DNA of 64,000 bases from Octopus sinensis (GCF_006345805.1 NC_043017.1:31124001-31188000), one strand, 5' to 3'. Positions 1,560 to 53,800 are shown, counted from the first letter of the stretch. Notes: generated by a model not told the origin, from the sequence alone. Numbers and translations are program-made.

Positions 1560-2596
1560 GGTTACCTTGTATCAAACTCACAGAACCGCTAAATCAAAAT
1601 AAAACCAGATAAAAAAAGACCAATAACAAACATCCTTAATTAAAATTTTTAAACACACATTTATTCCTATGAACACAGAAAAAAACCCTTTCAGGTACCT
1701 TTTCGGTTTGAACGGCAGTTTTTTCTGGCGGTGTCATATGAAATTGCCACCCATAATTATGATCCTAGAATCGAACTATTGCATTTCAATCTATTTTAGA
1801 TTTAGGGTTAGTTAGGTTTAGTTAGGGTTAGGGCTAGGGTTAAGGTTAGGGGTGGGGGAAGGGTATCTTTTTTTTCTTCACAAATGTAAATAAACCCAAT
1901 CTGTTTCTTAAACGAGGGACATATTCATACGGCACAGAATGCTTTTTAACTCAATAGACGTCACTGATTGGTTGAAATTGCAGAAATTGAAGAAAAAACA
2001 ACAAATATCTTACAAACTATAGAATTTTCTCAATAAAGCCAAGAGAAAAAGATGTTCTATAAACACATTCTCCCAGTATACGGAGTTTTAAATTTTTTAG
2101 TTACCTGGAAATTATGTTAAAAACTGCCGTTCAAACCGAAAAGATCCCCTTTCAGATTTAGAAAATATAAATTTCTAGAAAATATAATCAAAAACAATAC
2201 CTCGGAACAAAAGAGCAGAACCTATTACCAATCCTATAAACCGGAGCCGACTCTAAAATGCTCCATTCAATAAAGTACGATTTATTATTATCTTCAAGAT
2301 TCCAGATAAGATTAATAAGACGACTAGAAGCCATATATCTGTTCCAAAAGGACTGATAATGATTCGAAACCCTGCTCTTAATATAATTAGCAGAAGAACC
2401 AATATAAAAGTAATCATTAACTTCAGAAATAGCTTTCGCTTGATAGACGACTTCTCTACGTTTACAAAATTACGAAATAAACAATTTTCTTTGTTTCTAC
2501 AATCACAAAGGGAATTATCACCCCTACTCGCACCTTCAACAATTGAATTATCATTAAGTGAAAAGCTATTACCTCCTCCATTATTGAAACTTATTT
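1560..2596 (-). pseudogene. Penelope-like element GIY-YIG endonuclease remnant, interrupted by a MITE
   Basis: Manual minus-strand translation across a frameshift gives CDCRNKENC...REVVYQAKAISEVNDYFYIGSSANYIKSRVSNHYQSF...LIWNLED...IEWSILESAPVYRIGNRFCSFCSE. It resumes beyond the MITE as CVHRNKCVFKNFN*. The VVY..YIG..K.R..H and CxxC layout is typical of PLE endonucleases. Confidence 0.75.
1694..2148. mobile_element. MITE with ~25-30 bp TIRs and an internal TTAGGG-like tract
   Basis: TIRs are CTTTTCGGTTTGAACGGCAGTTTTT (1699) and AAAAACTGCCGTTCAAACCGAAAAG (ending 2143). The direct repeat CCCTTTCAG lies at 1686-1694 and 2147-2155, so the TSD is 6-9 bp depending on the boundary chosen. Confidence 0.85.
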
Positions 2597-21681: not shown

Positions 21682-22252
21682 TGTACGTTGTGGATTCACA
21701 AGTGAATGTATTTGTAACATCGTGAGTGTATGAATCGTTTCCAGATCTAGAAAGAGTCTCCAGAAAGATGCTGTTGAAAGAAACATTCTAAGTGTATAGT
21801 TTATGTTATCAATGTGATCTTGTTAGCTCGGAAATCGTAGAACGAATTTATACAAATAAAATTTGAACAAATAACAGCGAAGAGAAATTATTTGAAGAGG
21901 GAAGTAGCATGAACTTGAATAAGGTCGACAAATCCAAGAACATCAACCTTAATACAACATAAAATTTTGATTTATTAAAGCTATCTCTGCTTCTACAGCA
22001 ATTAACAAATGAGAATTGTACCAGCTCAACACTATAGAGGGAGGTAATTTCCCGAATCAAGTATTCTTTTGAATTCAAATATCTTATTTCTGGGCGGTTT
22101 GTCTAGATATAAGATGGCAATTCAGGATTGTTTCTATCTTCAGCACGGCAATTGTGCCACCGTATCTCACGATGTGTTTTTGTTTATACAAAAAATTACA
22201 TTTGTATAAACACAAATGTATCTGTATATCTATCTATCTATATAATTATATA

Positions 22253-22845
22253 TATATTTAACGTAAGATAAATTTTTTTCAAAAAGGTTTTATCAATGGC
22301 CAGCATATTAAAAAATACCTTTAAAGGTTAAATTTATAAACAACTTATAAATAAGGGCAAACGAAAAAATGTCTAATGCCAAATATGCCGAAATTAGATA
22401 CCTTGTCTATAACCATATAATTTTTCAAAATACGCATGCTACTCAAAAAAGGTCGACAGAAATTTCTTTAAAAAATCCATTATTACCATATCGGACCAAT
22501 TTCAGGGTTAGTTCATAAGAACCCTCCCTTCGTCAGTGATAAATGTGGCAAAGAAATAAATGAGATACTTACTCATACCAATGGAAAAAGCAAACACTAA
22601 GTCATGAGCACAATTAAGTACCCCAAATACATCCAAATTAGAAGTTCTCCAGCCCATCTGAGACACGTGCTATTTGAACTGAGGGCTCTCACAGAGTGAG
22701 AGAGTCCGGAAGGGAACACTATTAAATTTTTATTAAATTTGCCCTTATTTATAAGTTGTTTATAAATTTAACCTTTAAAGGTATTTTTTAATATTCTGGC
22801 CATTGATAACATTTTTTCGAAACATTTTATCCTACATAAGATATA
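22253..22845. mobile_element. MITE with ~110-bp TIRs
   Basis: Left arm 22253-22361 and right arm 22738-22845 are reverse complements. The inner ~60 bp (ATATTAAAAAATACCTTTAAAGGTTAAATTTATAAACAACTTATAAATAAGGGCAAA) is essentially perfect. The ends are TA-rich. Confidence 0.85.
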
Positions 22846-23874
22846 AATTTAATAGCGTCCGATTAATGTTTGCAAGGGGAGATCATCGTTCCCATCTCTA
22901 GCCTTACGTGATCCACACAGATCCGGGTTTCTTGGTAGCAACCCATCATCGTTGTGTGATAATCACGAGCTTGTGATAAAACTCATTCCACATGCAAAAT
23001 ACTATATACTTTTTCCAGTGACCAACTCTCACTGATCTCGAAAAAGGAGAAATAAGCAATATTATAACACTGAGCGAGAATTGAGCAATACGGAATCGTA
23101 AAATATATGTGCTAACTAGATGTGGCGGTCCCATAGAGGACGTTGCTACTGTTGTTTTTAGCTCCAGGTGGACATGTCCTCCAGCTGGGACCGCTAGGAC
23201 CAACACACTTAGAAGGCAATTATATTTTACGAGTCTCTACTGCTACTGTGTACTTCTCGCTCAAAGATTTAATATCGATTATTTCTCCTTTTAAACATGA
23301 TTCTTAAAGTAAAACTTCCTTCATGGTCTACCATCCACACTAACTACGCTCGCATCTTCTGACCAATCTCTCCTATCTCTTCCCAACTTTATCAAACGGT
23401 CAAATGCCCCCTCTGGTGCCCTTTGTTGCTTGAAAACCGGAGGACAAATCTCAAACAAACTAAAACCATTTTTTAATGTTTCCTCCTTTCAGTTTGAGTA
23501 AAGTGATTTCATCCACGATTTTCTTATCGTTTTTTACAACGTAATACGTTAAAGCCTGTTGAATAGATTTTACCTAATATAATGAATTTGATAATTGCTA
23601 TTTAATCTTTTTAGGCTTGTTTGAAACAGCTGTAAAGGACTGTCTGATTTTTGAAGATAATAATTTTTCATTAAATGCCACATCTCCATTTCCTTACTTC
23701 CTTGTGAATGATTAAATACCATCGTTTATATATAAATTTACTGTTTTATGTATATTATTATTCACAACAAATAGTAGTAACAATATTATTAGTAACAATG
23801 AACCAGTAGTTCATTGGAAAATACCATCCCTTAATGAAGCTAATTTAATCTCAAATCTAATTTATACATGTGTA

Positions 23875-23907
<33 letters not shown>

Positions 23908-25043
23908 CTATGTGTAGAGCAATTATACGGATAAACAAGTTAGGTATGTGAAATACAATGGTTTTGGTTATTGATGAATATCTAGGTATATATATACAGA
24001 TATTTATATTGATCGATCCATCTTTTACAGATTACAAAGGACAGAGGAAGAAATGTGTTTATATGTCCAACAGCTGTATCTTGAGCTTGGCGATCCATGG
24101 TAATGTTGGTAGATGTAGTTTATCTCAACAGACAGTGACTCGCCTTATCCTATGTTGATTGCGTCCATTACGGCCGAATATTGCAATTAACTATATTTAC
24201 CAACATTACCATGGGTCTCCGAGCTCCAGAAACAGCTGTGGGACTTATAAAACCTTTCTTCCACCCCTTGAATTCCCTCCTTCGTTTGTACACGGTGTTA
24301 GTTGGATCTATCAATATAAATATCAATAAATTTCTATTTAAATATTCATCGTCTGAATGCCTCCATCTTTTGCTTTCTTTCGTTGTTCAACTAAAATTCT
24401 TCGAGACAGTTCTTCAGCAGTGAGGCAAGAATGGGCCCTATTTTGGATATGGACAATAACAGGACAACCAATAGTGTCGTATGGAAGGGCTATCCACAAG
24501 TATTCAAGCTAACTGCTCGGGAATGTCGACACCAGTTCCGTATGGTTGTATCAGCTTAAAACATTCCAAGCGCATTTGTATTTGGTTGCCTTAGAGTATA
24601 GGTTTGACTGGTATTCCAATAATAATATCGAATGATTTAATTTGGGATTAGAAAAGTGTAATTCTGCATTTCCGGAACATGGAGGTCGATATTGCATAAT
24701 TGCATTTCGGGTAAGTGACATTTATCTTGGTATTAAATTATACCATCTAGAAAATTACACATAATAAAAATATTAAAATTAAAATAACAATAGCATACCG
24801 ATAAATAAGTAAATTGCAAAAAAATAATAAAAACGTATATAATTGGTAGAATAATCCTTTGGACTATTATATGTGGAGTGTTGAAGTCAATGAACGCGTT
24901 CATAGAATCAAAGATTCTTAGAAAGCTCCCATAGTCAGAGTAATGTCCGAAAAGGACCAGGACCACTTGATTAAAGCATGTAGATGATTTAGGTCTCATA
25001 TAGAAACACACACACACCACACACACCTATATTATATATATAT

Positions 25044-25065
<22 letters not shown>

Positions 25066-25075
<10 letters not shown>

Positions 25076-28000
25076 GAGGGCATTATACATACATGCCAGG
25101 AGGCATTCTACATACACGCCATACGCTAAGAGGGACAATCAGTCATTTCTACCAAAAATATTACTAATCCTACCGAATGCATTTTTCAAAGAAAGACATT
25201 TAAAAATATATAGACCTGTATCACAGTGATTTCATACTTACGTAATCATCAGCAGGCCTGAATATACTATAAATAAACAACGACCCTGCTTCGCTTAAGC
25301 CGATCAGCTAACTGGTCAACATCAACGAAGCACATGTGAATTTATATATACTATCCGGATGAATGGCAAACTTTTACGAATTGCATTTCGGGAGAGGAAA
25401 AGTTTTTTCGGAATAAAAATTTAGCAATTAAGGACAACTACTTAATAAGGAAAACTTAACAAGAAATTGTCAGGTAGATAGCGTAAAAACCTCATAAGAG
25501 AAAAAATTTCGAAAATAATTATTTCTTATTGAACATATTAATTTATATATAGAGGGCATTATACATACATGCCAGGAGGCATTCTACATACACGCCATAC
25601 GCTAAGAGGGACAATCAGTCATTTCTACCAAAAATATTACTAATCCTACCGAATGCAATTTTTCAAAGAAAGACATTTAAAAATATATAGACCTGTATCA
25701 CAGTGATTTCATACTTACGTAATCATCAGCAGGCCTGAATATACTATAAATAAACCAACGACCCTGCTTCGCTTAAGCCGATCAGCTAACTGGTCAACAT
25801 CAACGAAGCACATGGGTGAATTTATATATACTATATCCGGATGAATGGCAAACTTTTACGAATTGCATTCGGGAGAGGAAAAGTTTTTTCGGAATAAAAA
25901 TTTAGCAATTAAGGACAACTACTTAATAAGGAAAACTTAACAGAAATTGTCAGGTAGATAGCGTAAAAACCTCATAAGAGAAAAAATTTCGAAAATAATT
26001 ATTTCTTATTGAACATATTAATTTATATATAGAGGGCATTATACATACATGCCAGGAGGCATTCTACATACACGCCATACGCTAAGAGGGACAATCAGTC
26101 ATTTCTACCAAAAATATTACTAATCCTACCGAATGCAATTTTTCAAAGAAAGACATTTAAAAATATATAGACCTGTATCACAGTGATTTCATACTTACGT
26201 AATCATCAGCAGGCCTGAATATACTATAAATAAACAACGACCCTGCTTCGCTTAAGCCGATCAGCTAACTGGTCAACATCAACGAAGCACATGGGTGAAT
26301 TATATATACTATATCCTGATGAATGGCAAACTTTTACGAATTGCATTTCGGGAGAGGAAAAGTTTTTTCGGAATAAAAATTTAGCAATTAAGGACAACTA
26401 CTTAATAAGGAAAACTTAACAAGAAATTGTCAGGTAGATAGCGTAAAAACCTCATAAGAGAAGAAATTTCGAAAATAATTATTTCTTATTGAACATATTA
26501 ATTTATATATAGAGGGCATTATACATACATCCAGGAGGCATTCTACATACACGCATACGCTAAGAGGGACAATCAGTCATTTCTACCAAAAATTATTACT
26601 AATCCTACCGAATGCAATTTTTCAAAGAAAGACATTTAAAATATATAGACCTGTATCACAGTGATTTCATACTTACGTAATCATCAGCAGGCCTGAATAT
26701 ACTATAAATAAACAACGACCCTGCTTCGCTTAAGCCGATCAGCTAACTGGTCAACATCAACGAAGCACATGGGTGAATTTATATATACTATATCCGGATG
26801 AATGGCAAACTTTTACGAATTGCATTTCGGGAGAGGAAAAGTTTTTTTCGGATAAAAATTAGCAATTAAGGACAACTACTTAATAAGGAAAACTTAACAA
26901 GAAATTGTCAGGTAGATAGCGTAAAAACCTCATAAGAGAAAAAATTTCGAAAATAATTATTTCTTATTGAACATATTAATTTATATATAGAGGGCATTAT
27001 ACATACATGCCAGGAGGCATTCTACATACACGCCATACGCTAAGAGGGACAATCAGTCATTTCTACCAAAAATATTACTAATCCTACCGAATGCAATTTT
27101 TCAAAGAAAGACATTTAAAAATATATAGACCTGTATCACAGTGATTTCATACTTACGTAATCATCAGCAGGCTGAAATATATAAATAAAAACGACCCTGC
27201 TTCGCTTAAGCCGATCAGCTAACTGGTCAACATCAACGAAGCACATGGGTGAATTTATATATACTATATCCGGATGAATGGCAAACTTTTACGAATTGCA
27301 TTTCGGGAGAGAAAAGCTTTTTCGGAATAAAAATTAGCAATTAAGGACAACTACTTAATAGGAAAACTTAACAAGAAATTGTCAGGTAGATAGCGTAAAA
27401 ACCTCATAAGAGAAAAAATTTCGAAAATAATTATTTCTTATTGAACATATTAATTTTATATAGAGGGCATTATACATACATGCCAGGAGGCATTCTACAT
27501 ACACGCCATACGCTAAGAGGGACAATCAGTCATTTCTACCAAAAATATTACTAATCCTACCGAATGCAATTTTTCAAAGAAAGACATTAAAAATATATAG
27601 ACCTGTATCACAGTGATTTCATACTTACGTAATCATCAGCAGGCCTGAATATACTATAAATAAACAACGACCCTGCTTCGCTTAAGCCGATCAGCTAACT
27701 GGTCAACATCAACGAAGCACATGGGTGAATTTATATATACTATATCCGGATGAATGGCAAACTTTTACGAATTGCATTTCGGGAGAGGAAAAGTTTTTTC
27801 GGAATAAAAATTTAGCAATTAAGGAAACTACTTAATAAGGAAAACTTAACAAGAAATTGTCAGGTAGATAGCGTAAAAACCTCATAAGAGAAAAAATTTC
27901 GAAAATAATTATTTCTTATTGAACATATTAATTTATATATAGAGGGCATTATACATACATGCCAGGAGGCATTCTACATACACGCCATACGCTAAGAGGG

Positions 28001-28871
28001 ACAATCAGTCATTTCTACCAAAAATATTACTAATCCTACCGAATGCAATTTTTCAAAGAAAGACATTTAAAAATATATAGACCTGTATCACAGTGATTTC
28101 ATACTTACGTAATCATCAGCAGGCCTGAATATACTATAAATAAACAACGACCTGCTTCGCTTAAGCCGATCAGCTAACTGGTCAACATCAACGAAGCACA
28201 TGGGTGAATTTATATATACTATATCCGGATGAATGGCAAACTTTTACGAATTGCATTTCGGGAGAGGAAAAGCTTTTTCGGAATAAAAATTTAGCAATTA
28301 AGGACAACTACTTAATAAGGAAAACTTAACAAGAAATTGTCAGGTAGATAGCGTAAAAACCTCATAAGAGAAAAAATTCGAAAATAATTATTTCTTATTG
28401 AACATATTAATTTATATATAGAGGGCATTATACATACATGCCAGGAGGCATTCTACATACACGCCATACGCTAAGAGGGACAATCAGTCATTTCTACCAA
28501 AAATATTACTAATCCTACCGAATGCAATTTTTCAAAGAAGACATTTAAAATATATAGACCTGTATCACAGTGATTTCATACTTACGTAATCATCAGCAGG
28601 CCTGAATATACTATAAATAAACAACGACCCTGCTTCGCTTAAGCCGATCAGCTAACTGGTCAACATCAACGAAGCACATGGGTGAATTTATAATACTATA
28701 TCCGGATGAATGGCAAACTTTTACGAATTGCATTTCGGGAGAGGAAAAGTTTTTTCGAATAAAAATTTAGCAATTAAGGACAACTACTTAATAAGAAAAC
28801 TTAACAAGAAATTGTCAGGTAGATAGCGTAAAAACCTCATAAGAGAAAAAATTCGAAAATAATTATTCTTA
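25066..28871 (-). repeat. Tandem array of a ~481-bp HHR-bearing unit, left arm (about 8 units; ribozyme on the minus strand)
   Basis: The unit starting TATATAGAGGGCATTATACATACATGCCAGGAGG recurs every ~480 bp (25070, 25550, 26030, 26510, 26990, 27460, 27940, 28420). Copies differ almost only by 1-2 bp indels. Confidence 0.97.
25213..25258 (-). ncRNA. Type I hammerhead ribozyme (representative of 8 minus-strand copies)
   Basis: Plus strand reads GACCTGTATCACAGTGATTTCATACTTACGTAATCATCAGCAGGCC. Copies start at 25213, 25690, 26170, 26648, 27128, 27600, 28080 and 28557. The minus strand carries an intact CUGAUGA...GAAA...AUA core with stems I-III. Confidence 0.8.
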
Positions 28872-28880
28872 TTGAACATA

Positions 28881-31858
28881 TAAGAAATAATTATTTTCGA
28901 AATTTTTTCTTATGAGGTTTTTACGCTATCTACCTGACAATTTCTTGTTAAGTTTTCCTTATTAAGTAGTTGTCCTTAATTGCTAAATTTTTATTCCGAA
29001 AAAATTTTCCTCTCCCGAAATGCAATTCGTAAAAGTTTGCCATTCATCCGGATATAGTATATATAAATTCACCCATGTGCTTCGTTGATGTGGACCAGTT
29101 AGCTGATCGGCTTAAGCGAAGCAGGGTCGTTGTTTATTTATAGTATATTCAGGCCTGCTGATGATTACGTAAGTATGAAATCACTGTGATACAGGTCTAT
29201 AGTTTTAAAGTCTTTCTTTGAAAAATTGCATTCGGTAGGATTAGTAATATTTTTGGTAGAAGTGACTGATTGTCCCTCTTAGCGTATGGCGTGTATGTAG
29301 AATGCCTCTGGCATGGCATGTATGTATAATGCCCTCTATATATAAATTAATATGTTCAATAAGAAATAATTATTTTCGAAATTTTTTCTCTTATGAGGTT
29401 TTTACGCTATCTACCTGACAATTTCTTGTTAAGTTTTCCTTATTAAGTAGTTGTCCTTAATTGCTAAATTTTTATTCCGAAAAAACTTTTCCTCTCCCGA
29501 AATGCAATTCGTAAAAGTTGCCATTCATCCGGATATAGTATATAAATTCACCCATGTGCTTCGTTGATGTTGACCAGTTAGCTGATCGGCTTAAGCGAAG
29601 CAGGGTCGTTGTTTATTTATAGTATATCAGGCCTGCTGATGATTACGTAAGTATGAAATCACTGTGATACAGGTCTATATATTTTTAAATGTCTTTCTTT
29701 GAAAAATTGCATTCGGTAGGATTAGTAATATTTTTGGTAGAAATGACTGATTGTCCCTCTTAGCGTATGGCGGTGTATGTAGAATGCCTCCTGGCATGTA
29801 TGTATAATGCCCTCTATATAAATTAATATGTTCAATAAGAAATATTATTTTCGAAATTTTTTCTCTTATGAGGTTTTTACGCTATCTACCTGACAATTCT
29901 TGTTAAGTTTTCCTTATTAAGTAGTTGTCCTTAATTGCTAAAATTTTTATTCCGAAAAAACTTTTCCTCTCCCGAAATGCAATTCGTAAAAGTTTGCCAT
30001 TCATCCGGATATAGTATATATATTCACCCATGTGCTTCGTTGATGTTGACCAGTTAGCTGATCGGCTTAAGCGAAGCAGGGTCGTTGTTTATTTATAGTA
30101 TATTCAGGCCTGCTGATGATTACGTAAGTATGAAATCACAGTGATACAGGTCTATATTTTTTAAATGTCTTTCTTTGAAAAATTGCATTCGGTAGGATTA
30201 GTAATATTTTTGGTAGAAATGACTGATTGTCCCTCTTAGCGTATGGCGTGTATGTAGAATGCCTCCTGGCATGTATGTATAATGCCCTCTATAATAAATA
30301 ATATGTTCAATAAGAAATAATTATTTTCGAAATTTTTTCTCTTATGAGGTTTTTACGCTATCTACCTGACAATTTCTTGTAAGTTTTCCTTATTAAGTAG
30401 TTGTCCTTAATTGCTAAATTTATTCCGAAAAAACTTTTCCTCTCCCGAAATGCAATTCGTAAAAGTTTGCCATTCATCCGGATATAGTATATATAAATTC
30501 ACCCATGTGCTTCGTTGATGTTGACCAGTTAGCTGATCGGCTTAGAGCGAAGCAGGGTCGTTGTTTATTTATAGTATATTCAGGCCTGCTGATGATTACG
30601 TAAGTATGAAATCACTGTGATACAGGTCTATATATTTTTAAATGTCTTTCTTTGAAAAATTGCATTCGGTAGGATTAGTAATATTTTTGGTAGAAATGAC
30701 TGATTGTCCCTCTTAGCGTATGGCGTGTATGTAGAATGCCTCCTGGCATGTATGTATAATGCCCTCTATATATAAATTAATATGTTCAATAAGAAATAAT
30801 TATTTTCGAAATTTTTTCTCTTATGAGGTTTTTACGCTATCTACCTGACAATTTCTTGTTAAGTTTTCCTTATTAAGTAGTTGTCCTTAATTGCTAAATT
30901 TTTATTCCGAAAAAACTTTTCCTCTCCCGAAATGCAATTCGTAAAAGTTTGCCATTCATCCGGATATAGTATATATAAATTCACCCATGTGCTTCGTTGA
31001 TGTTGACCAGTTAGCTGATCGGCTTAAGCGAAGCAGGGTCGTTGTTTATTTATAGTATATTCAGGCCTGCTGATGATTACGTAAGTATGAAATCACTGTG
31101 ATACAGGTCTATATATTTTTAAATGTCTTTCTTTGAAAAATGCATTCGGTAGGATTAGTAATATTTTTGGTAGAAATGACTGATTGTCCCTCTTAGCGTA
31201 TGGCGTGTATGTAGAATGCCTCCTGGCATGTATGTATAATGCCCTCTATATATAAATTAATATTTCAATAAGAAATAATTATTTTCGAAATTTTTTCTCT
31301 TATGAGGTTTTTACGCTATCTACCTGACAATTTCTTGTTAAGTTTTCCTTATTAAGTAGTTGTCCTTAATTGCTAAATTTTTATTCCGAAAAAACTTTTC
31401 CTCTCCCGAAATGCAATTCGTAAAAGTTTGCCATTCATCCGGATATAGTATATATAAATTCACCCATGTGCTTCGTTGATGTTGACCAGTTAGCTGATCG
31501 GCTTAAGCGAAGCAGGGTCGTTGTTTATTTATAGTATATTCAGGCCTGCTGATGATTACGTAAGTATGAAATCACTGTGATACAGGTCTATATATTTTTA
31601 AATGTCTTTCTTTGAAAAATTGCATTCGGTAGGATTAGTAATATTTTTGGTAGAAATGACTGATTGTCCCTCTTAGCGTATGGCGTGTATGTAGAATGCC
31701 TCCTGGCATGTATGTATAATGCCCTCTATATATAAATTAATATGTTCAATAAGAAATAATTATTTTCGAAATTTTTTCTCTTATGAGGTTTTTACGCTAT
31801 CTACCTGACAATTTCTTGTTAAGTTTTCCTTATTAAGTAGTTGTCCTTAATTGCTAAA
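28881..31858 (+). repeat. Tandem array of the same ~481-bp unit in inverted orientation, right arm (about 6.2 units; ribozyme on the plus strand)
   Basis: Reverse complement of the left-arm unit. An error-free period measures 481 bp (31320 to 31801). It ends at TTGCTAAAT in a (TA)n tract. Confidence 0.97.
31054..31117 (+). ncRNA. Type I hammerhead ribozyme with extended stem I (representative of 6 plus-strand copies)
   Basis: Stem I is GGCCTG (31064-69) / CAGGTC (31104-09). CTGATGA is at 31070-76. Stem II is TAC-GTAA-GTA with a flanking U.U. GAAA is at 31089-92. Stem III is ATCAC-T-GTGAT. Predicted cleavage is after AUA (31103). Stem I of the plus copies starts at 29152, 29630, 30107, 30583, 31064 and 31543. 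Confidence 0.8.
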
Positions 31859-32986
31859 TATATATATATATATATATATAGCGAGAGAGAGAGAGGGGGA
31901 GAGTAAACAGGTGAGATCCAGAGTAAAGGTCATATGATTTGAACTGACACTGAATTTTTACCGAGGACTGAGTCCGCGGTTTAAGGGTTGGCTATAAGAG
32001 AAATCCAATCAAGCTTTAATGGATAGAGTCATGCAGATTAACACGATTGAGCTTGATAAACAAAATATACATACATAAAGACATGTAAATATACAGGGAT
32101 GTATATATAAAGAGAAGCAAAAACTTAAAATATTCAGATGAACATTCGTGTTTAAGCATGTAGATATTTATATATTTACCGGAAAAATTTACAATGAGTG
32201 TAAAAAGAAAGTGAAAATATGAGCAGAGGTAGGGTATTTGAAGTCCGACAGTTGTTTCTGGGAGTTCATAATTACGTTAGAGTTGTAATGTACATAATTA
32301 GTAGATGTAGTGTGCAAAAGCAGATGATGCATATAAACAGGTCTCCACCATCGACAACTAGCCGGTATGTATGTATGTATGTATGTATGTATGTATGTAT
32401 GTATGTATGTATGTATGTACGTCTGGATGAATATACGTATACACACATATAATATAACCAGCACATATATCTCTTAGAGATGTCATAAATATTTAGTATT
32501 TAGAAACTTAGAGGAAAAAATTAAAATAGTTTCCTTATGCAGTAAAAACAATGCTGTAAAGTATTTCGATGCAGCAAAAACAATAAATAATGGCCTTCAA
32601 CATTTTATATCGAAATATTTTTAACCCACTATTTAGACGACGTTATTTATAACTTTATCTGTTTCGAAGTATACCTTTGCAAAAGTGAACAACTTCATAT
32701 ACATACATACATATATATACATTCATATATATATATATATATACATGCACACATGCATATATATATATGTCTATGTGTGCGTGATGGTGTGTCTTTTCTG
32801 TGTGTGTATGTGTACAAATAAAAGAAAATATCATTTAGAAATATAATGAAGTTATATATTGAAGTTATATATTTTGTAACAACTCCGGATACGATTGTAT
32901 TTCTTGTAATCAGACGTTACTAGAGATAACACCTGATAACTTCTCATATATATATGAATTTGCGTGTGTGTGTGTGTACGTATATA

Positions 32987-45787: not shown

Positions 45788-45826
<39 letters not shown>

Positions 45827-45912
45827 ATTAAATCTCAGAGCGAGATATAATCAGTAGGTGTATGGAATCTTAACGTATATTTGCCAACTAAATATGGAGT
45901 TCTATACAGCCC

Positions 45913-46532
45913 AGTGCTAATGTTGTTTATAGTTCCAGGAAAACATCTCCTCCAGCTGGCTAACGACACACAGTCTGTGTCTGTCAGTATATACGAGGGT
46001 AGGTCATCGCTCTCATCTCTAGCCTTACGTGAAACACATGGACTCGAGTTTCTGGGTGGTTACCCATCCTCAGCATATGTTAATCACTAGCGAGTAACTG
46101 AAGCTAATTCCATTCACAAAATACAATACATTTTTCTAGCGACTTACTGTCATTCATCTCGTAAAAGAGAGTAGCGCTGTCCTGTATAGGGCGCCACACT
46201 TTGTTGGCAAATGTATGTTACAATTCCGCACCGCTAGTGTTTATATTATGCTCAGAGATTTAATATAGATTTAATTAGATTTTTACTAGATCAGCGACAG
46301 TGAGTCGCTAGAAAAATGTATTGTATTTTGTGAATAGAATGAGCTCCATCACTAGCTAGGGATTAACATACGCTGAGGACGGGTAACCAACTGGAAATTC
46401 GAGTCCGTGTGTGTCCCGAACGTCTAGAGATGGGAGCGGTGACCTCCCCTCGCAAATACTAACCGGACACAGACTGTGTCGTTAGCCAGCCGGGGGAGAT
46501 GTTTTCCTGGGTCTATAAACAACAGTAGCACT
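45913..46532. mobile_element. Foldback or MITE element with ~245-bp imperfect arms
   Basis: Left arm AGTGCTAATGTTGTTTATAGTTCCAGGAAAACATCTCC...CTAGCGACTTACTGTC pairs with right arm GACAGTGAGTCGCTAG...GGAGATGTTTTCCTGGGTCTATAAACAACAGTAGCACT. A decayed relative lies at ~22875-23275. Confidence 0.8.
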
Positions 46533-46605
46533 CTCACTATATTTAACGTGAGATGGTTTCCCTTATGCAGTGCAGATGGACCCTATATACGGTTAATCCC
46601 ATTAA

Positions 46606-47076
46606 GTCGGCGAGCTGGCAGAACCGTTAGCACGCCGGGCGAAATGCGCAGCCGTATTTCATCTGCCGTTACGTTCTAGGTTCAAATTCCGCCGAGGTCG
46701 ACTTTGCCTTTCATCCTTTCGGGATCGATAGATAAAGTACCAGTTTCGCACTGGTGTCAATGTAATCGACTTAATTCCTTTGTCTGTCCTTGTTTGTCCC
46801 CTCTATGTTTAGCCCCTTGTGGGTAATAATGAAACAATTATGTAGGGCGGCGAGCTGGCAGAAACGTTTGCACGCCGGGCGAAATGCGTAGCCGTATTTC
46901 GTCTGCCGCTACGTTCTGGGTTCAAATTGCGCCGAGGTCGACTTTGCCTTTCATTCTTTCGGGGTCGATAAATTAAGTACCAATTACGCACCGGGGTCGA
47001 TGTAATCGACTTAATCCGTTTGTCTGCCCTTGTTTGTCGCTTCTATTTTTAGCCCCTTATGGGCAGTAAAGAAATA
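46606..47076 (+). mobile_element. Two family A SINEs in direct tandem (46606-46835 and 46846-47076)
   Basis: Two complete, mutually diverged copies separated by about 10 nt. Confidence 0.85.
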
Positions 47077-47605
47077 TATATACGGTTTATCCACTTGCTA
47101 CAGAAAATAATATCAGTCTACCTCTCACCAATGGAAAAAATGAATTCAAAAAATAGATTGGATGATCATGGATCTATCGACTTTCACGACAGGACTGCTT
47201 CTTCAGTGGCAAATATAATTATTCAATTACTTCTGTATGAGAAAGAAAAATGGAAAAAGAGGTGTCGAAAGAAATTAGTATTGAATTGTGACAGCAAGAA
47301 TGATTGATTAATGTCAGGAAAATAGCAGAAACGTAGAATGATGGTTGGAGACAAATGTATTGACTTTTTTTTTACCAGCAAATTATTTCGTCAGACACAA
47401 AATATTTAATGATTAGCAATGATCATATATATGAGTGCGTCTGGATATGTGTATATACATATAAATATATGTTTATGCTTACTGATATGTATGTGCGAGT
47501 GTATGTGTGTGTAGAGAGAGAAAGAGATACATACATTCTTTCATACGTACACATTTGCACACAGACACAGACATATATATATATATATATATGTATATTA
47601 TTCTA

Positions 47606-50481: not shown

Positions 50482-50895
50482 ATTTATATAGCATGCATGT
50501 ATATATAAATACTTGTAGTGATTGTAATAAAGCCTTTTCATTCCAGCTCCTATTAAAATTCTTTTGTATAAACTCTACGTATACTTGCTGATTTCCACAT
50601 TTATATCCAATCGAAAGAAAAGTCTTATTGTATAATAATATCTGGTAACCGATATGCGGAGAGGAGCTTTGGGAAGCACGCTATACCGTTTTAACGTTAT
50701 TACACAGATAATATTATACATGCAACAATGAATTTTGTCAGTGAACAGGCGGCAGTTTCAAAGCGACGCAAAAAATTATGACGAATTAAATTTAAAAGTT
50801 TAAGCGAATCTAAAGGTTTTGTGTGTTTTTAAATTGCTTATAGACACCTTTTCACGCTACAATTGTTGCGTATATATATATATATATATATATAC

Positions 50896-53800
50896 TAGAG
50901 CCCATGCCTTCCACACCCTCAGGGTTGGCACCCTCAACGTTGGCACTCTGAAAGGTAGGTCTGGTGAGATAGTCGAGATGCTTGAACGGAGATGTGTGGA
51001 TATATGTTGCATGCAAGAAATAAGGTGGAGAGGAGGATCAGCTAGGTTCCTCACAGGCAAGGAACGCAGGTACAAGATTTTCTGGGCAGGGAACACTGAC
51101 GGGGTTGGTGGCGTGGGTATACTTATCGCTGAGAAATGGGTAGATAAAGTAACTGAGGTAATCAGAGTAAGTGACAGAATACTTAAGATTAGATTAGTGC
51201 TTCATCATAGTTTAGCAACCATTATATCAGCCTATGCTCCTCAGTCGGGGCTACCCGATGGACAGAAAGACCGATTCTATGACACTCTACTGCAGACTAC
51301 CTCATTGACGAACGACAGAGACCTTATCTTTGTGGCTGGTGACTTCAATGGTCACGTTGGACGACATGCTGGGGGCTTCCATGGCGTACATGGAGGCTAT
51401 GGCTATGGCTCCCGCAACGAGGAGGGAAACAGGCTGCTGGAGTTCTGCGATGCAAATAATCTTATGATTTGCAACACTAACTTCAGGAAACCTACCAGCC
51501 ACCTAGTCACTTACCAATCGGGCCAACATACCAGCAAATTGACTACATCCTTACAAGGCAAAGGGAGAGATGGCTGCTTATAAATGCCAAAACCTTCCCA
51601 GGTGAAGAATGTACCCCACAACATAGACTGGTAGTTAGTGACTTTAGGATCAGGACTAGGAGGACAACCAGAAGACGACAAATATGGAGAAGAAGGATCT
51701 GGAAGCTTAAAGATCCTGCAAATGGACAGAGATTTAGGGACATATTACTTGAAGCCTCTGACGAAGTAGAAGGGGATAGAGCATCACAGGGGGTAGAAGA
51801 CAGCTGGACGTTTCTAAGGGACAACCTGCTGAGAGCCACTGACCAGATCTGTGGCTGGTGCAAAGTCCCCTCTCGACCTAGAATAACGTGGTGGTGGAAC
51901 AATATTGTAGACAGGGCTATTAGAGAAAAGAGACAGGCTTGGAAGGTCTGGAAAAATGGGGGTAGCAGGGAATTGTATCAGACTGCCAAAAGAGAAGCTA
52001 GGAGACAGGTTTATTTAGCAGAGGGGAAGCAGATAAGAAAAAATTTGCCAATGTTCTGCGCCGTGAGACCAAAGACTGGAGGTGTTTCGTGTTGCAAGAC
52101 AGTGTGTGAGAGAGAATCGTGATGTGGTAGGAGAGAAGTGTGTTCGCATGGATGATGGTTCACTTGCGCTAAATGAGGATGCAAAGAGAGAGGTTGGAGA
52201 TGCCACTATGAAAGGTTGCTGAATGAAGAAAATGAATGGGATAAAGAGAGTCTGCCGAATGTTGACCCAACAGAGGGACCAGCTATCCGAGTTGATAGTT
52301 CTGTGGTAGCTAAGGCAATTAGAAGCATGAAGACAGGGAAAGCCCCAGGCCCATCAGGAATCACTGCAGAGATGCTCAAAATGTCTGGTAGTGTCGGCTA
52401 TAGCCTAGTCACCCATATAGTTAATCAGGTGATACACAAAGGGGTCATACCCAATGACTGGTGTAGCAGTATAATAGTCAACTGCTACAAAGGTAAAGGT
52501 GATGCCCTAGATACAAATAACTACAGAGGTATCAAGCTGTTGGACCAGGTGATGAAGGTTACGGAGAGGGTCATAGCCGAACTAATTAGAGAGAGAGTTA
52601 GTTTAGATGAGATGCAGTTTGGGTTTGTGCCAGGGAAAAGTACTACTGATGCTATATTCCTGGTAAGGCAGCTGCAGGAGAAATAACTAGCCAAAGATAA
52701 GCCCCTGTACCTGGCTTTTGTTGACATGGAGAAAGCCTTCGACAGGGTCCCCCGATCCCTTATCTGGTGGGCAATGAGAAAACTAGGGATAGATGAATGG
52801 TTAGTGAGAGCTGTGCGGGCCATGTATAGGGACGCCGCTAGTAAGGTGAGGGTTGGAAATGAGTACAGTGAAGAATTCCGGGTAGAGGTAGGGGTCCACC
52901 AAGGCTTACTCAGCCCCCTCCTATTTATCTTAGTCCTCCAGGCAATAACGGAGGAATTCAAGACAGGATGCCCTTGGGAGCTCCTCTATGCTGATGACCT
53001 TGCTCTAATTGCTGAGTCGCTATCAGAACTGGAGGAGAAGTTTCAGGTGTGGAAACAAGGATTAGAATCGAAGGGCCTCAGAGTCAATCTAGCTAAAACC
53101 AAAGTCGTAATCAGTAGGAAGGTAGACAAATCACAAACACCTTCAGGTAGATGGCCCTGCTCGATCTGTAGAAAAGGTGTAGGTAGAAACTCTATAAGAT
53201 GCACCAAGTGTAAGCTATGGACACATAGAGATGCAGCAATGTCAAAGGAAGGCTAACTAGGAAGATGGTTTTTGTATGTGGCAGATGCTCAGGAACAATA
53301 AACACTGAAAATGCTCTGAGACCAACTTCCGTCACTTTCCAGGGAGAAAAACTAGAAATAGTTGATAGTTTCCGTTACCTAGGTGACCAAGTCAGCAGCG
53401 GGGGCGGGTGTGCTGAAAGTGTAACTGCTAGAGTAAGAATAGCTTGGGCAAAGTTCAGAGAGCTCTTACCTCTGCTGGTGACAAAAGGCCTCTCGCACAG
53501 AGTGAAAGGCAGACTGTATGATGCGTGTGTACGAACAGCCATGCTACATGGCAGTGAAACATGGGCCGTGACTGCTGAGGATATGCGTAAGCTCGCTAGA
53601 AAAATGAAGCCAGTATGCTCCGATGGATGTGTAATGCCGGTACTCACACTCGGCAGAGTGTAAGTACCTTGAGAGAAAAGCTGGACCTAAGAAGCATCAG
53701 TTGTGGTGTGCAAGAGAGACGTTTGCGCTGGTATGGTCATGTGGCGAGAATGGATGAAGATAGTTGTGTGAAAAACTGCCACACCCTAGCGGTTGAGGGA

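What the first reader, a model, noticed from the sequence alone, without database searches (positions are those of the whole stretch)
25066..31858. Retrozyme-like locus: a 481-bp tandem unit with a hammerhead ribozyme in each of 14 copies
Seen: a ~481-bp unit repeated about 14 times. Each copy has an intact type I hammerhead core (CUGAUGA, GAAA, NUH = AUA) with closing stems I, II and III, and no meaningful ORF. Both array ends sit in (TA)n. Established: HHR-bearing tandem repeats (newt satellite 2, Schistosoma Sm-alpha, cave-cricket pDo500, metazoan non-LTR retrozymes) are transcribed as multimers and self-cleave to monomers that can circularise; PLE machinery has been proposed to mobilise them. 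Inference: this is a cephalopod-type retrozyme or ribozyme satellite making ~481-nt linear or circular RNAs. That is longer than the roughly 170-400 nt I recall for most animal non-LTR retrozymes. PLE remnants occur elsewhere in the window. I cannot tell whether this family is already catalogued.
Basis: partly seen in the sequence, partly recalled or inferred. Interest (0 to 1): 0.92.

Follow-up and report, generated by a model that had tools for sequence, protein, structure and literature searches.

The report
Octopus hammerhead-ribozyme repeat in two inverted arrays
A 481-bp non-coding repeat carrying a hammerhead self-cleaving RNA motif occurs 14 times in an octopus-like genome, as two back-to-back inverted arrays set in a (TA)n microsatellite; it looks like a new member of the known animal "retrozyme" class, not a new kind of element.

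Summary
The repeat is real: 14.2 near-identical units (472-481 bp, 97-100% alike), each with a complete type I hammerhead-like motif.

**Correction to the finding.** It is not one head-to-tail array.
- There are two inverted blocks: 8.0 units with the ribozyme on the minus strand (25059-28881) and 6.2 units with it on the plus strand (28880-31865).
- Their RNA-sense 5' ends meet at 28880/28881. Their 3' ends point outward, each into a 23-bp (TA)n run.

**What fits a metazoan non-LTR retrozyme.**
- The unit has no ORF over 54 aa and 33% GC.
- It folds far better than shuffled sequence (z = -5.5).
- A motif this good is expected about once per 415 Mb of shuffled sequence.

**Weak points.**
- Helix II has a U.U mismatch at its base. 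The axolotl HHR_Amex2 ribozyme has the same mismatch and still cleaves.
- No Rfam hammerhead model reports the motif. Rfam also misses two textbook hammerheads elsewhere in the window, so this negative carries little weight.
- I found no cleavage, expression or comparative data.

**Other points.** The 481-nt length is inside the published range of 51-972 bp. The architecture suggests one reverse-transcription insertion of Penelope-like-element type. Verdict: a new member of a known kind, of moderate interest.

The parts
25028..25075 (.). Left flanking (TA)n microsatellite, preceded by (CA)n. The perfect 23-bp run is 25044-25066. It merges with the unit's own TATATATAAAT segment at unit position ~157.
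   Evidence: TRF; sequence
25059..28881 (-). Left arm: 8.0 units with the HHR sense on the minus strand. The RNA-sense 5' end is at 28881 (unit position 158) and the 3' end at 25059 (unit position ~157-161). It holds 7 complete HHR-to-HHR monomers.
   Evidence: blastn of the consensus; monomer extraction
28871..28890 (.). Head-to-head inversion junction (...TTATTGAACATAT|AAGAAATAATT...). The arms overlap by 2 nt and are offset by 9 nt (unit position 158 versus 167). The junction lies next to the unit's own 12-nt palindrome AAATAATTATTT.
   Evidence: sequence; blastn coordinates. The Rfam miRNA-like 'hits' here are just the hairpin.
28880..31865 (+). Right arm: 6.2 units with the HHR sense on the plus strand. 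The 5' end is at 28880 (unit position 167) and the 3' end at 31865 (unit position 283). It holds 5 complete monomers.
31858..31897 (.). Right flanking (TA)n, a perfect 23-bp run at 31858-31880, followed by (GA)n.
31063..31110 (+). Representative HHR.
- Helix I 5' strand: 31063-31069.
- CUGAUGA: 31070-31076.
- Helix II with GUAA loop: 31077-31088.
- GAA: 31089-31091.
- Helix III (4 bp, CUG loop): 31092-31102.
- A17: 31103, with the predicted cut between 31103 and 31104.
- Helix I 3' strand: 31104-31110.
- Helix I extends past a 2-nt bulge, pairing 31055-31060 with 31111-31116.
   Evidence: sequence; descriptor; fold
29151..29198 (+). HHR copy; predicted cut after 29191
29629..29676 (+). HHR copy; predicted cut after 29669
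30106..30153 (+). HHR copy; predicted cut after 30146; loop III is CAG instead of CUG
30582..30629 (+). HHR copy; predicted cut after 30622
31542..31589 (+). HHR copy; predicted cut after 31582 (last copy of the right arm)
28556..28603 (-). HHR copy; predicted cut between 28563 and 28562
28079..28126 (-). HHR copy; predicted cut after 28086 (reading the minus strand)
27599..27646 (-). HHR copy; predicted cut after 27606
27127..27174 (-). HHR copy; predicted cut after 27134; helix I reduced to 5 bp by changes in its 5' strand
26647..26694 (-). HHR copy; predicted cut after 26654
26169..26216 (-). HHR copy; predicted cut after 26176
25689..25736 (-). HHR copy; predicted cut after 25696
25212..25259 (-). 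HHR copy; predicted cut after 25219 (last copy of the left arm)

Best explanation
This is a non-autonomous, non-coding hammerhead-ribozyme repeat of the metazoan non-LTR retrozyme type, in an octopus-like genome.

**Proposed working (all inferred).**
1. Each arm is transcribed as a multimer on its HHR strand: leftward from the centre for the left arm and rightward for the right arm.
2. In each unit the 48-nt type I hammerhead folds. Helix I forms between AGGCCUG at the end of one unit and CAGGUCU at the start of the next.
3. The ribozyme cuts after A17 of AUA and releases ~481-nt monomers that begin with CAGGUC.
4. The monomer is highly self-paired, and helix I holds its 5'-OH and 2',3'-cyclic-phosphate ends together. 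It can therefore be ligated into a circle, as shown for the coral, mussel and axolotl retrozymes.

**Proposed origin (inferred).** The locus came from a single reverse-transcription insertion into a (CA)n(TA)n(GA)n compound microsatellite. The template was a multimeric or circular RNA. Either both target strands primed cDNA (twin priming), or the enzyme folded back at the unit's AT-rich palindrome. This would be done by Penelope-like-element (PLE) machinery. It would explain why the 14 units are near-identical, why both RNA-sense 3' ends point outward into (TA)n, and why the 5' ends meet head to head.

**Shown:** the motif, the copy structure, the orientation, the flanks and the predicted fold.
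**Inferred:** transcription, cleavage, circularisation, and the insertion mechanism and its enzyme.
For: - **Motif.** All 14 units carry C3-A9, G12-A14, the A15.1-U16.1 pair and H17=A. Helix I has 7 bp, then a 2-nt bulge and 5-6 more bp. Helix III has 4 bp. Helix II has 3 bp with a GUAA loop.
- **Chance rate.** There was 1 hit of this quality in 415 Mb of dinucleotide shuffles and 31 at minimal thresholds. That is about 2e-6 to 7e-5 for one 481-bp unit.
- **Retrozyme traits.** The longest ORF is 54 aa. GC is 32.8%. The monomer MFE on the HHR strand is -125.2 kcal/mol against -93.5 +/- 5.8 for shuffles, z = -5.5. The antisense strand gives -97.5, z = -4.2. 63% of bases are paired, and helix I closes the molecule.
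- **Active fold.** The active HHR fold is within about 4 kcal/mol of the local MFE.
- **Precedent for the U.U mismatch.** Axolotl HHR_Amex2 has a U.U mismatch at the base of helix II and self-cleaves: 22% per hour as a monomer, more as a dimer (PMC7229834).
- **Architecture.** The arms share one consensus with no arm-specific differences. Both 3' ends lie at 23-bp (TA)n runs, and a random point lies within 3 bp of a run edge with probability 0.018. The flanks are otherwise unrelated.
- **PLE signatures in the literature.** PLE insertions typically form partial tandems with an adjacent inverted 5'-truncated copy and favour microsatellites such as (TA)n (PMC8557442). Retrozymes are related to PLE pLTRs (10.64898/2026.07.22.740005).
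- **Genomic context.** Other HHR-bearing repeats lie in the same window. Octopus vulgaris carries 30 Penelope families among its active elements (PMC13282606).
Against: - No Rfam hammerhead family is reported, even at E<=10 on a 91-nt slice. The same search also misses canonical HHRs at 46.0-46.4 kb, which weakens this point.
- Position 10.1/11.1 is U.U instead of the usual G-C. Helix II is only 3 bp and A/U-rich, and the cleavage triplet is AUA rather than GUC. Activity may therefore be low or absent.
- There is no covariation evidence. The copies differ only by scattered singletons, mostly 1-nt indels. The HHR region is no more conserved than the rest of the unit.
- Only one locus is visible, and no related sequence was found by any route. 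Mobility and copy number are therefore unknown.
- No PLE RT lies in the window. The only GIY-YIG signal is below Pfam's cutoff.
- The inversion could in principle be an assembly error.
Confidence: 0.7

Rival explanations
1. It is an ordinary satellite or minisatellite whose unit carries a hammerhead look-alike, either by chance or as a decayed relic. The motif would be catalytically dead, and the array would have grown by unequal crossing-over or replication slippage.
For: No Rfam HHR hit. There is a U.U mismatch at 10.1/11.1 and helix II is weak. At minimal thresholds a 2.8-Gb genome would hold hundreds of chance descriptor hits, extrapolating from 31 per 415 Mb. The HHR region is no more conserved than the rest of the unit.
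Against: A motif with helices this good is about 30 times rarer, at 1 per 415 Mb. It sits in exactly the genomic context where real type I HHRs occur. Three further HHR motifs from two other repeat families lie in the same 64 kb, against 0.01-0.025 expected. Unequal crossing-over does not make two inverted arrays with 3' ends outward in (TA)n. The U.U variant is active in axolotl.
Confidence: 0.15
2. The head-to-head inversion is an assembly or long-read chimera artefact, and the true locus is a single-orientation array. This would change the architecture and the insertion inference, but not the retrozyme reading.
For: Differences between units are dominated by 1-nt indels, 55 indel columns against 25 substitutions. 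This is typical of poorly polished long-read sequence. Units near the centre carry more differences than the outer ones.
Against: The arms differ in length (8.0 versus 6.2 units). The flanks are unique and unrelated on the two sides. A single fold-back read would give mirror-image flanks. The junction is offset by 9 nt with a 2-nt overlap rather than being a perfect mirror.
Confidence: 0.15
3. The unit is the terminal repeat (pLTR) of an autonomous Penelope-like element, not an independent element.
For: PLE pLTRs carry HHRs and form tandem and inverted structures in microsatellites. Retrozyme consensuses often match PLE termini.
Against: There is no RT or GIY-YIG ORF in or beside the array. 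The unit occurs nowhere else in the window. The only RT in the window is an APE-type RTE LINE 19 kb away, and the only GIY-YIG-like fragment is 22.6 kb away and sub-threshold. Fourteen units without any ORF is amplification independent of a coding body.
Confidence: 0.05
4. The locus works mainly as an inverted-repeat (hairpin RNA) source. Read-through transcription across the centre would give a roughly 3-kb near-perfect double-stranded RNA, to be processed into small RNAs or edited by ADAR. The ribozyme would be incidental. This reading does not exclude the best explanation.
For: Two arms of about 3 kb are more than 97% complementary, with only a 9-nt offset at the centre.
Against: There is no expression data. 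The structure is a by-product expected of PLE-type integration. If the HHRs are active, they would cut the sense arm of such a transcript.
Confidence: 0.1

Closest known systems
Metazoan non-LTR retrozymes (Cervera & de la Pena 2020, PMC7229834), especially the Mytilus galloprovincialis repeats of 350-390 bp
   Same: Tandem units of a few hundred bp, one type I HHR per unit, low GC, no ORF/LTR/PBS/PPT, a highly self-paired monomer, and a mollusc host. Like the mussel HHRs, it lacks an obvious canonical loop 1-loop 2 pattern.
   Different: The unit is 481 bp, above the 170-400 nt quoted in 2020 but inside the 51-972 bp range of the 2026 preprint. Helix III has 4 bp with a non-palindromic triloop, so it looks like a monomer-acting form. 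The cleavage triplet is AUA. The arrays are inverted. No expression or cleavage data exist here.
Axolotl HHR_Amex2 / Rtz_353 retrozyme (PMC7229834)
   Same: A U.U mismatch at the base of helix II and a more stable helix III than classic amphibian HHRs, within a repeat of about 350 bp. It is experimentally self-cleaving.
   Different: No sequence similarity was tested or expected, and the phylum differs. Its helix III is 2 bp plus a tetraloop, against 4 bp plus a triloop here.
Penelope-like element pLTR hammerheads and PLE insertion architecture (PMC4209133; PMC8557442)
   Same: [quoted passage not shown]
   Different: There is no RT/GIY-YIG ORF. PLE min-HHRs have a long helix II (7-8 bp), a short helix I (4-5 bp) and almost no helix III, which is the opposite of this motif.
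Classic ribozyme satellites: newt satellite 2, Schistosoma Sm-alpha, cave-cricket pDo500 (from my own knowledge and the introductions of the papers cited)
   Same: Tandem satellite units, each with a type I HHR, transcribed as multimers and cut to monomers.
   Different: Those HHRs have GUC triplets, G-C at 10.1/11.1 and 1-2-bp palindromic helices III that act as dimers. That canonical form is present in this window, but in a different repeat (46033-46081, 46365-46413).
L1 twin priming (Ostertag & Kazazian 2001; from my own knowledge)
   Same: Two cDNA segments with their 3' ends at the two sides of the target and their 5' ends joined head to head by microhomology.
   Different: The enzyme and template differ. 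Here both segments are multimers of one short unit, and the two 5' ends fall within 9 nt of the same unit position. That fits a fold-back template switch at least as well.

Membership tests
Metazoan non-LTR retrozyme | Short tandem repeats (about 150-1000 bp unit, dimers to large multimers) | tested here: met
   Period 479; 8.0 + 6.2 copies; 97-98% matches
Metazoan non-LTR retrozyme | A type I hammerhead with the conserved core in each unit | tested here: met
   14 of 14 units pass my relaxed type I descriptor, with all core positions present. They fail the strict version because of the U.U mismatch at 10.1/11.1.
Metazoan non-LTR retrozyme | Low GC (<45-50%) and no ORF, LTR, PBS or PPT | tested here: met
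   GC 32.8%. The longest ORF is 54 aa stop-to-stop. No terminal repeats other than the units themselves.
Metazoan non-LTR retrozyme | Monomer RNA highly self-paired | tested here: met
   MFE -125.2 kcal/mol, z = -5.5 against 100 shuffles. 63% of bases are paired as a circle.
Metazoan non-LTR retrozyme | HHR self-cleaves; monomers accumulate as linear and circular RNA | not testable with these tools
   No RNA data or wet-lab assay was available.
Metazoan non-LTR retrozyme | Dispersed at many loci (mobile); co-occurs with autonomous PLEs | tested here: inconclusive
   One locus in the window. No related sequence could be retrieved. PLEs are reported in Octopus vulgaris (PMC13282606). In the window there is only a sub-threshold GIY-YIG fragment.
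Rfam hammerhead families | Score at or above the family gathering threshold | tested here: not met
   No hammerhead hit at gathering score or at E<=10. The same search also misses canonical HHR motifs at 46033-46081 and 46365-46413, so the test is insensitive here.
Autonomous Penelope-like element (unit = pLTR) | Repeat flanks an RT + GIY-YIG ORF | tested here: not met
   A Pfam scan of 144 stop-to-stop ORFs found RVT_1 only in the RTE LINE at 52.2-53.3 kb, and one 21-bit GIY-YIG fragment at 2191-2469. There is no ORF in or next to the array.
Canonical metazoan type I HHR (helix I 6 bp, helix II 4 bp with G10.1-C11.1, helix III 1-2 bp with palindromic loop, GUC) | G-C at 10.1/11.1, a short palindromic helix III and a GUC triplet | tested here: not met
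   U.U at 10.1/11.1, a 4-bp helix III with a CUG loop, and an AUA triplet. The helix I and II lengths (7 and 4 positions) do fit.

The most novel reading that the evidence does not exclude
The locus is the fossil of a single event. A circular or multimeric retrozyme RNA was copied round and round by a PLE reverse transcriptase, primed in a nicked (TA)n tract. It was resolved either by twin priming or by a fold-back at the unit's AT-rich palindrome. That would leave 14 identical units in two mirror arrays with 3' ends outward.

If so, loci of this shape are direct genomic evidence for the proposed but never demonstrated rolling-circle mobilisation route of animal retrozymes. Their frequency and junctions could be counted genome-wide. 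As a side effect, read-through would make a ~3-kb perfect hairpin RNA in an animal known for heavy ADAR editing.
Probability: 0.3. Interest if true: 0.6.

Novelty: new member of a known kind. Interest (0 to 1): 0.4.

Why it matters
Animal retrozymes have been described in cnidarians, a mussel, amphibians and other vertebrates. How they are copied back into DNA is still only a hypothesis. I found no paper in the searchable library that links hammerhead ribozymes to octopus repeats, so this would extend the class to cephalopods.

The more useful point is the architecture. Near-identical units lie in two inverted arrays, both RNA-sense 3' ends sit in (TA)n, and the junction is clean with a 2-nt overlap. 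This is what reverse transcription of a multimer or circle at a PLE-type target would leave. Counting such loci genome-wide is a cheap way to test the PLE-mobilisation model.

The ribozyme itself combines a U.U mismatch at 10.1/11.1, an AUA triplet and a 4-bp helix III. It is a natural variant worth a kinetic assay. The ribozyme class and the element class are both already known.

Tried and rejected
- **Rfam cmscan.** I ran the whole window at gathering score, the array at E<=10 and a 91-nt slice. There was no hammerhead hit. I do not treat this as evidence against the motif, because the search also fails on textbook motifs at 46.0-46.4 kb and on the 22.5-kb motif. The miRNA-like hits at 28817-28935 and 46105-46343 are just the centres of inverted repeats.
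- **Related copies through unit-encoded peptides.** Two exact look-ups and one homology search with the 54-aa ORF found nothing.
- **Exact 23-mer of the HHR in public collections.** No matches in JGI metagenome contigs or IMG/VR. These collections are not expected to hold cephalopod DNA.
- **Orthologous or empty site through flanking ORFs.** Three look-ups found nothing.
- **GIY-YIG fragment as a PLE marker.** The homology search found nothing.
- **Covariance model from the other HHR families in the window, to score the array's HHR independently.** MAFFT misaligned the 3' halves because the helix II and III lengths differ. I dropped this.
- **tRNA-derived SINE origin.** ARAGORN finds no tRNA in the window.
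- **Mirror-symmetric variants between the arms.** These would show duplication of an older array, but none were significant.
- **Conservation of the HHR relative to the rest of the unit.** This is uninformative at 97-100% identity.
- **Similarity of the unit to the other HHR elements.** None beyond short AT-rich words.

Full report

Tandem Repeats Finder reports two adjoining arrays of period 479: 25065-28881 (8.0 copies, 98% matches) and 28880-31859 (6.2 copies, 97%). Reading the sequence across 28880 shows that the second array is the reverse complement of the first. AT skew flips from +0.165 to -0.150 across it.

A blastn search with the consensus unit gives:
- minus-strand hits from 28881 down to 25059;
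- plus-strand hits from 28880 to 31865;
- nothing anywhere else in the 64 kb.

The core string CTGATGA with its surroundings occurs 8 times on the minus strand (25252 to 28596) and 6 times on the plus strand (29158 to 31549). The count of 14 ribozyme-bearing copies is therefore right. The picture of one head-to-tail array is wrong: there are two blocks joined head to head.

Cutting at the predicted cleavage sites gives 12 complete monomers of 472-481 nt, 7 on the left and 5 on the right, with a 481-nt consensus.

**2. The motif**

In one representative copy the parts are:

| Element | Coordinates | Sequence or note |
|---|---|---|
| Helix I, 5' strand | 31063-31069 | AGGCCUG |
| Core 1 | 31070-31076 | CUGAUGA |
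| Helix II and loop 2 | 31077-31088 | UUAC-GUAA-GUAU: three pairs, a GNRA-type loop, U.U at 10.1/11.1 |
| Core 2 | 31089-31091 | GAA |
| Helix III | 31092-31102 | A15.1-U16.1 plus three more pairs, CUG loop |
| H17 | 31103 | A; predicted cut after it |
| Helix I, 3' strand | 31104-31110 | CAGGUCU |

- Helix I has 7 pairs, one of them G.U. After a 2-nt bulge it continues for 5-6 more pairs.
- Every invariant core position is present, and the open helix is helix I, so the motif is type I.
- The hammerhead fold scores -11.4 kcal/mol against -15.7 for the local MFE, and the two share helix I.
- Two copies deviate. One has a loop-III base change (30113). One has helix I shortened to 5 bp (27167).

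**3. Chance**

I wrote a type I descriptor requiring:
- CUGANGA;
- a helix II hairpin with at least 3 of its first 4 positions paired;
- GAA and the A15.1-U16.1 pair;
- helix III of at least 3 bp;
- H17 not G;
- helix I of at least 5 bp.

In 3,597 dinucleotide-preserving shuffles of the window, with the array collapsed to one unit (415 Mb of strand sequence), it hit 31 times. Only one hit had helices as long as those observed, with helix I of 7 bp or more and helix III of 4 bp or more (a smaller run is). For a single 481-bp unit this is a probability of about 2e-6 to 7e-5.

A whole 2.8-Gb genome would still hold some chance hits, by extrapolation. Such hits would very rarely fall in the unit of a tandem repeat.

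**4.

cmscan reports no hammerhead family:
- at gathering score on the whole window;
- at E<=10 on the array;
- at E<=10 on a 91-nt slice.

Taken alone, this would count against the motif. However, a second descriptor found textbook type I hammerheads at 46033-46081 (minus strand) and 46365-46413 (plus strand). The first reads AACAUAUG-CUGAGGA-UGGGU AACC ACCCA-GAA-ACUCGAGU-C|CAUGUGUU, with a GUC triplet and the palindromic helix III typical of animal HHRs. cmscan at E<=10 does not report these either, nor the strict-descriptor motif at 22.5 kb. I conclude that this negative is uninformative in the present set-up.

The real reasons for caution are the U.U mismatch at 10.1/11.1, the short A/U-rich helix II and the AUA triplet. 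The literature gives a direct precedent. [quoted passage not shown] It still self-cleaves at 22% in one hour as a monomer, and much better as a dimer (PMC7229834).

**5. Properties of the unit**

- The longest ORF is 54 aa stop-to-stop and 41 aa with a start codon. It has no homologues.
- GC is 32.8%.
- ARAGORN finds no tRNA in the window.
- On the HHR strand the monomer folds to -125.2 kcal/mol, against -93.5 +/- 5.8 for shuffles (z = -5.5). The complementary strand gives -97.5 (z = -4.2).
- As a circle, 63% of bases are paired.
- In the MFE the 5' CAGGUCU pairs with the 3'-proximal AGGCCUG. Helix I therefore brings the two cleavage-generated ends together.

These are the features listed for metazoan non-LTR retrozymes: short tandem repeats, a type I HHR, low GC, no LTR/PBS/PPT, and highly self-paired circRNAs (PMC7229834).

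The 481-nt length exceeds the 170-400 nt quoted there. It lies within the 51-972 bp range of consensus lengths in a 2026 preprint (10.64898/2026.07.22.740005), so it is not remarkable.

**6. Architecture and what it suggests**

*Orientation of the arms.*
- The left arm runs, in RNA sense, from unit position 158 at the centre (28881) to about unit position 157-161 at 25059.
- The right arm runs from unit position 167 (28880) to unit position 283 at 31865.
- Both RNA-sense 3' ends therefore point outward. The 5' ends meet with a 2-nt overlap and a 9-nt offset, beside the unit's own 12-nt palindrome AAATAATTATTT.

*Flanks.*
- Each outer end abuts a perfect 23-bp (TA)n run. (CA)n lies further left and (GA)n further right.
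- (TA)n runs of 8 or more repeats cover 3.4% of this window.
- The chance that a random point lies within 3 bp of a run edge is 0.018, or about 3e-4 for both ends.
- Beyond the microsatellites the flanks are unrelated. This argues against a simple fold-back read artefact.

*Variation between units.*
- The two arms share one consensus, with no arm-specific differences.
- The variants are scattered singletons: 55 indel columns and 25 substitutions.
- This fits very recent origin from one template, with sequencing noise on top.

*Interpretation (inferred).* PLE insertions are described as partial tandems with an adjacent inverted 5'-truncated copy and a bias for microsatellites, (TA)n among them (PMC8557442). 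Retrozymes have been tied phylogenetically to PLE terminal repeats. I therefore infer a single target-primed reverse-transcription event on a multimeric or circular template. It would have been resolved by twin priming or by a fold-back template switch. The near-coincidence of the two 5' ends (158 versus 167) favours the fold-back version slightly. None of this is shown directly.

**7. Context**

*Host.* The window is octopus-like. An RTE-type LINE (APE endonuclease plus RT, 50804-53660) has its best protein matches in Octopus bimaculoides (79% identity), O. sinensis and O. vulgaris.

*'PLE remnants elsewhere'.* This claim is weakly supported.
- A Pfam scan of 144 stop-to-stop ORFs found RVT_1 only in that LINE.
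- It found one GIY-YIG fragment at 2191-2469, at 21 bits (below the 22.6-bit cutoff), with no RT beside it and no homologues.

*Other hammerhead-bearing repeats in the window.*
- A canonical-HHR inverted-repeat element lies at 45824-46550, next to (TA)n(GA)n. An older copy lies at 22857-23290.
- A ~610-bp element lies at 22245-22853, bounded by 117-bp inverted repeats. It carries a well-formed HHR at 22484-22543 on the minus strand. That HHR shares the AUA triplet and the 4-bp, triloop helix III with the array's ribozyme.
- That makes three further HHR motifs, from two other repeat families, where 0.01-0.025 are expected. HHR elements are evidently common in this genome, which raises the prior that the array's motif is genuine.

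*Literature.* Octopus vulgaris is reported to hold 30 Penelope families among its active elements (PMC13282606). I found no paper in the library that connects hammerhead ribozymes with octopus repeats.

**8. Verdict**

The best reading is a cephalopod member of the metazoan non-LTR retrozyme class (confidence about 0.7). It has an unusual but precedented ribozyme variant. Its locus architecture carries the signature of PLE-type integration.

The rivals are:
- a dead look-alike in an ordinary satellite (0.15);
- an assembly artefact for the inversion only (0.15);
- a PLE terminal repeat (0.05);
- a hairpin-RNA locus (0.1), which does not exclude the best reading.

Cleavage, expression, circularisation, copy number and mobility are untested. 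No comparative sequence could be obtained with the tools available.

This is a new member of a known kind, with interest of about 0.4. The main value lies in the architecture, which offers a testable clue to how retrozymes are mobilised.

Noticed in passing
window 22245-22853 (HHR at 22484-22543, minus strand): A ~610-bp element bounded by 117-bp inverted repeats (22245-22361 and 22738-22853, 88-94% complementary). It carries a well-formed type I hammerhead: UUAUCA-CUGACGA-[4 bp, 2x2 internal loop, 5 bp, UUAU loop]-GAA-AUUG GUC CGAU-A|UGGUAA. This passes my strict descriptor (0.0025 expected per window). It shares the AUA triplet and the 4-bp, triloop helix III with the array's ribozyme. There is no Rfam hit, and it is single-copy in the window.
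   Followed up: partly
window 45824-46550 (HHRs at 46033-46081 minus strand and 46365-46413 plus strand); older copy at 22857-23290: A head-to-head inverted-repeat element with a canonical animal type I hammerhead in each arm: GUC triplet, palindromic CUCGAG helix III, 5-bp helix II. Helix I shows one compensatory U-A to C-G change between the two copies. Its left flank is (TA)n(GA)n. A 70-74% identical copy lies 2 kb from the array. It looks like PLE-pLTR or retrozyme debris.
   Followed up: partly
window 45950-46500, 22440-22580 and 31040-31130: Rfam 15 cmscan at E<=10 reports no hammerhead family for any of the four HHR motif types in this window, including textbook ones. Hammerhead negatives from this tool should therefore not be trusted without a positive control.
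   Followed up: partly
window 2191-2469, minus strand: A GIY-YIG-like fragment (...VVYQAK...YFYIGSS...). It matches Pfam PF01541 at 21 bits (cutoff 22.6), E = 4e-4. No RT ORF lies beside it, and the protein search found no homologue. It may be a very decayed PLE or Naiad endonuclease.
   Followed up: partly
window 50804-53660, plus strand: A decayed RTE-type LINE: Exo_endo_phos endonuclease, then RVT_1 split over several frames. Its closest proteins are annotated 'craniofacial development protein 2-like' in Octopus bimaculoides (79%), O. sinensis and O. vulgaris. This indicates an octopus-like source genome.
   Followed up: yes
window 46603-47081: Two direct copies of a 239-bp unit, 87% identical. 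They contain a B-box-like GGTTCAAATTCCGCCGAGGTCGAC and look like a tRNA-derived SINE in tandem. ARAGORN calls no tRNA.
   Followed up: no
whole window: Microsatellite density is extreme. There are 84 runs of (TA) with 8 or more repeats, covering 3.4% of the window, plus many (CA)n, (GA)n and GTAT repeats. Several HHR elements sit at (TA)n(GA)n compound repeats.
   Followed up: partly
window 25059-31865: Differences between the 12 complete monomers are mostly 1-nt indels (55 indel columns against 25 substitutions). They are more frequent in units near the inversion centre than in the outer units. This suggests long-read consensus noise rather than biological divergence.
   Followed up: partly
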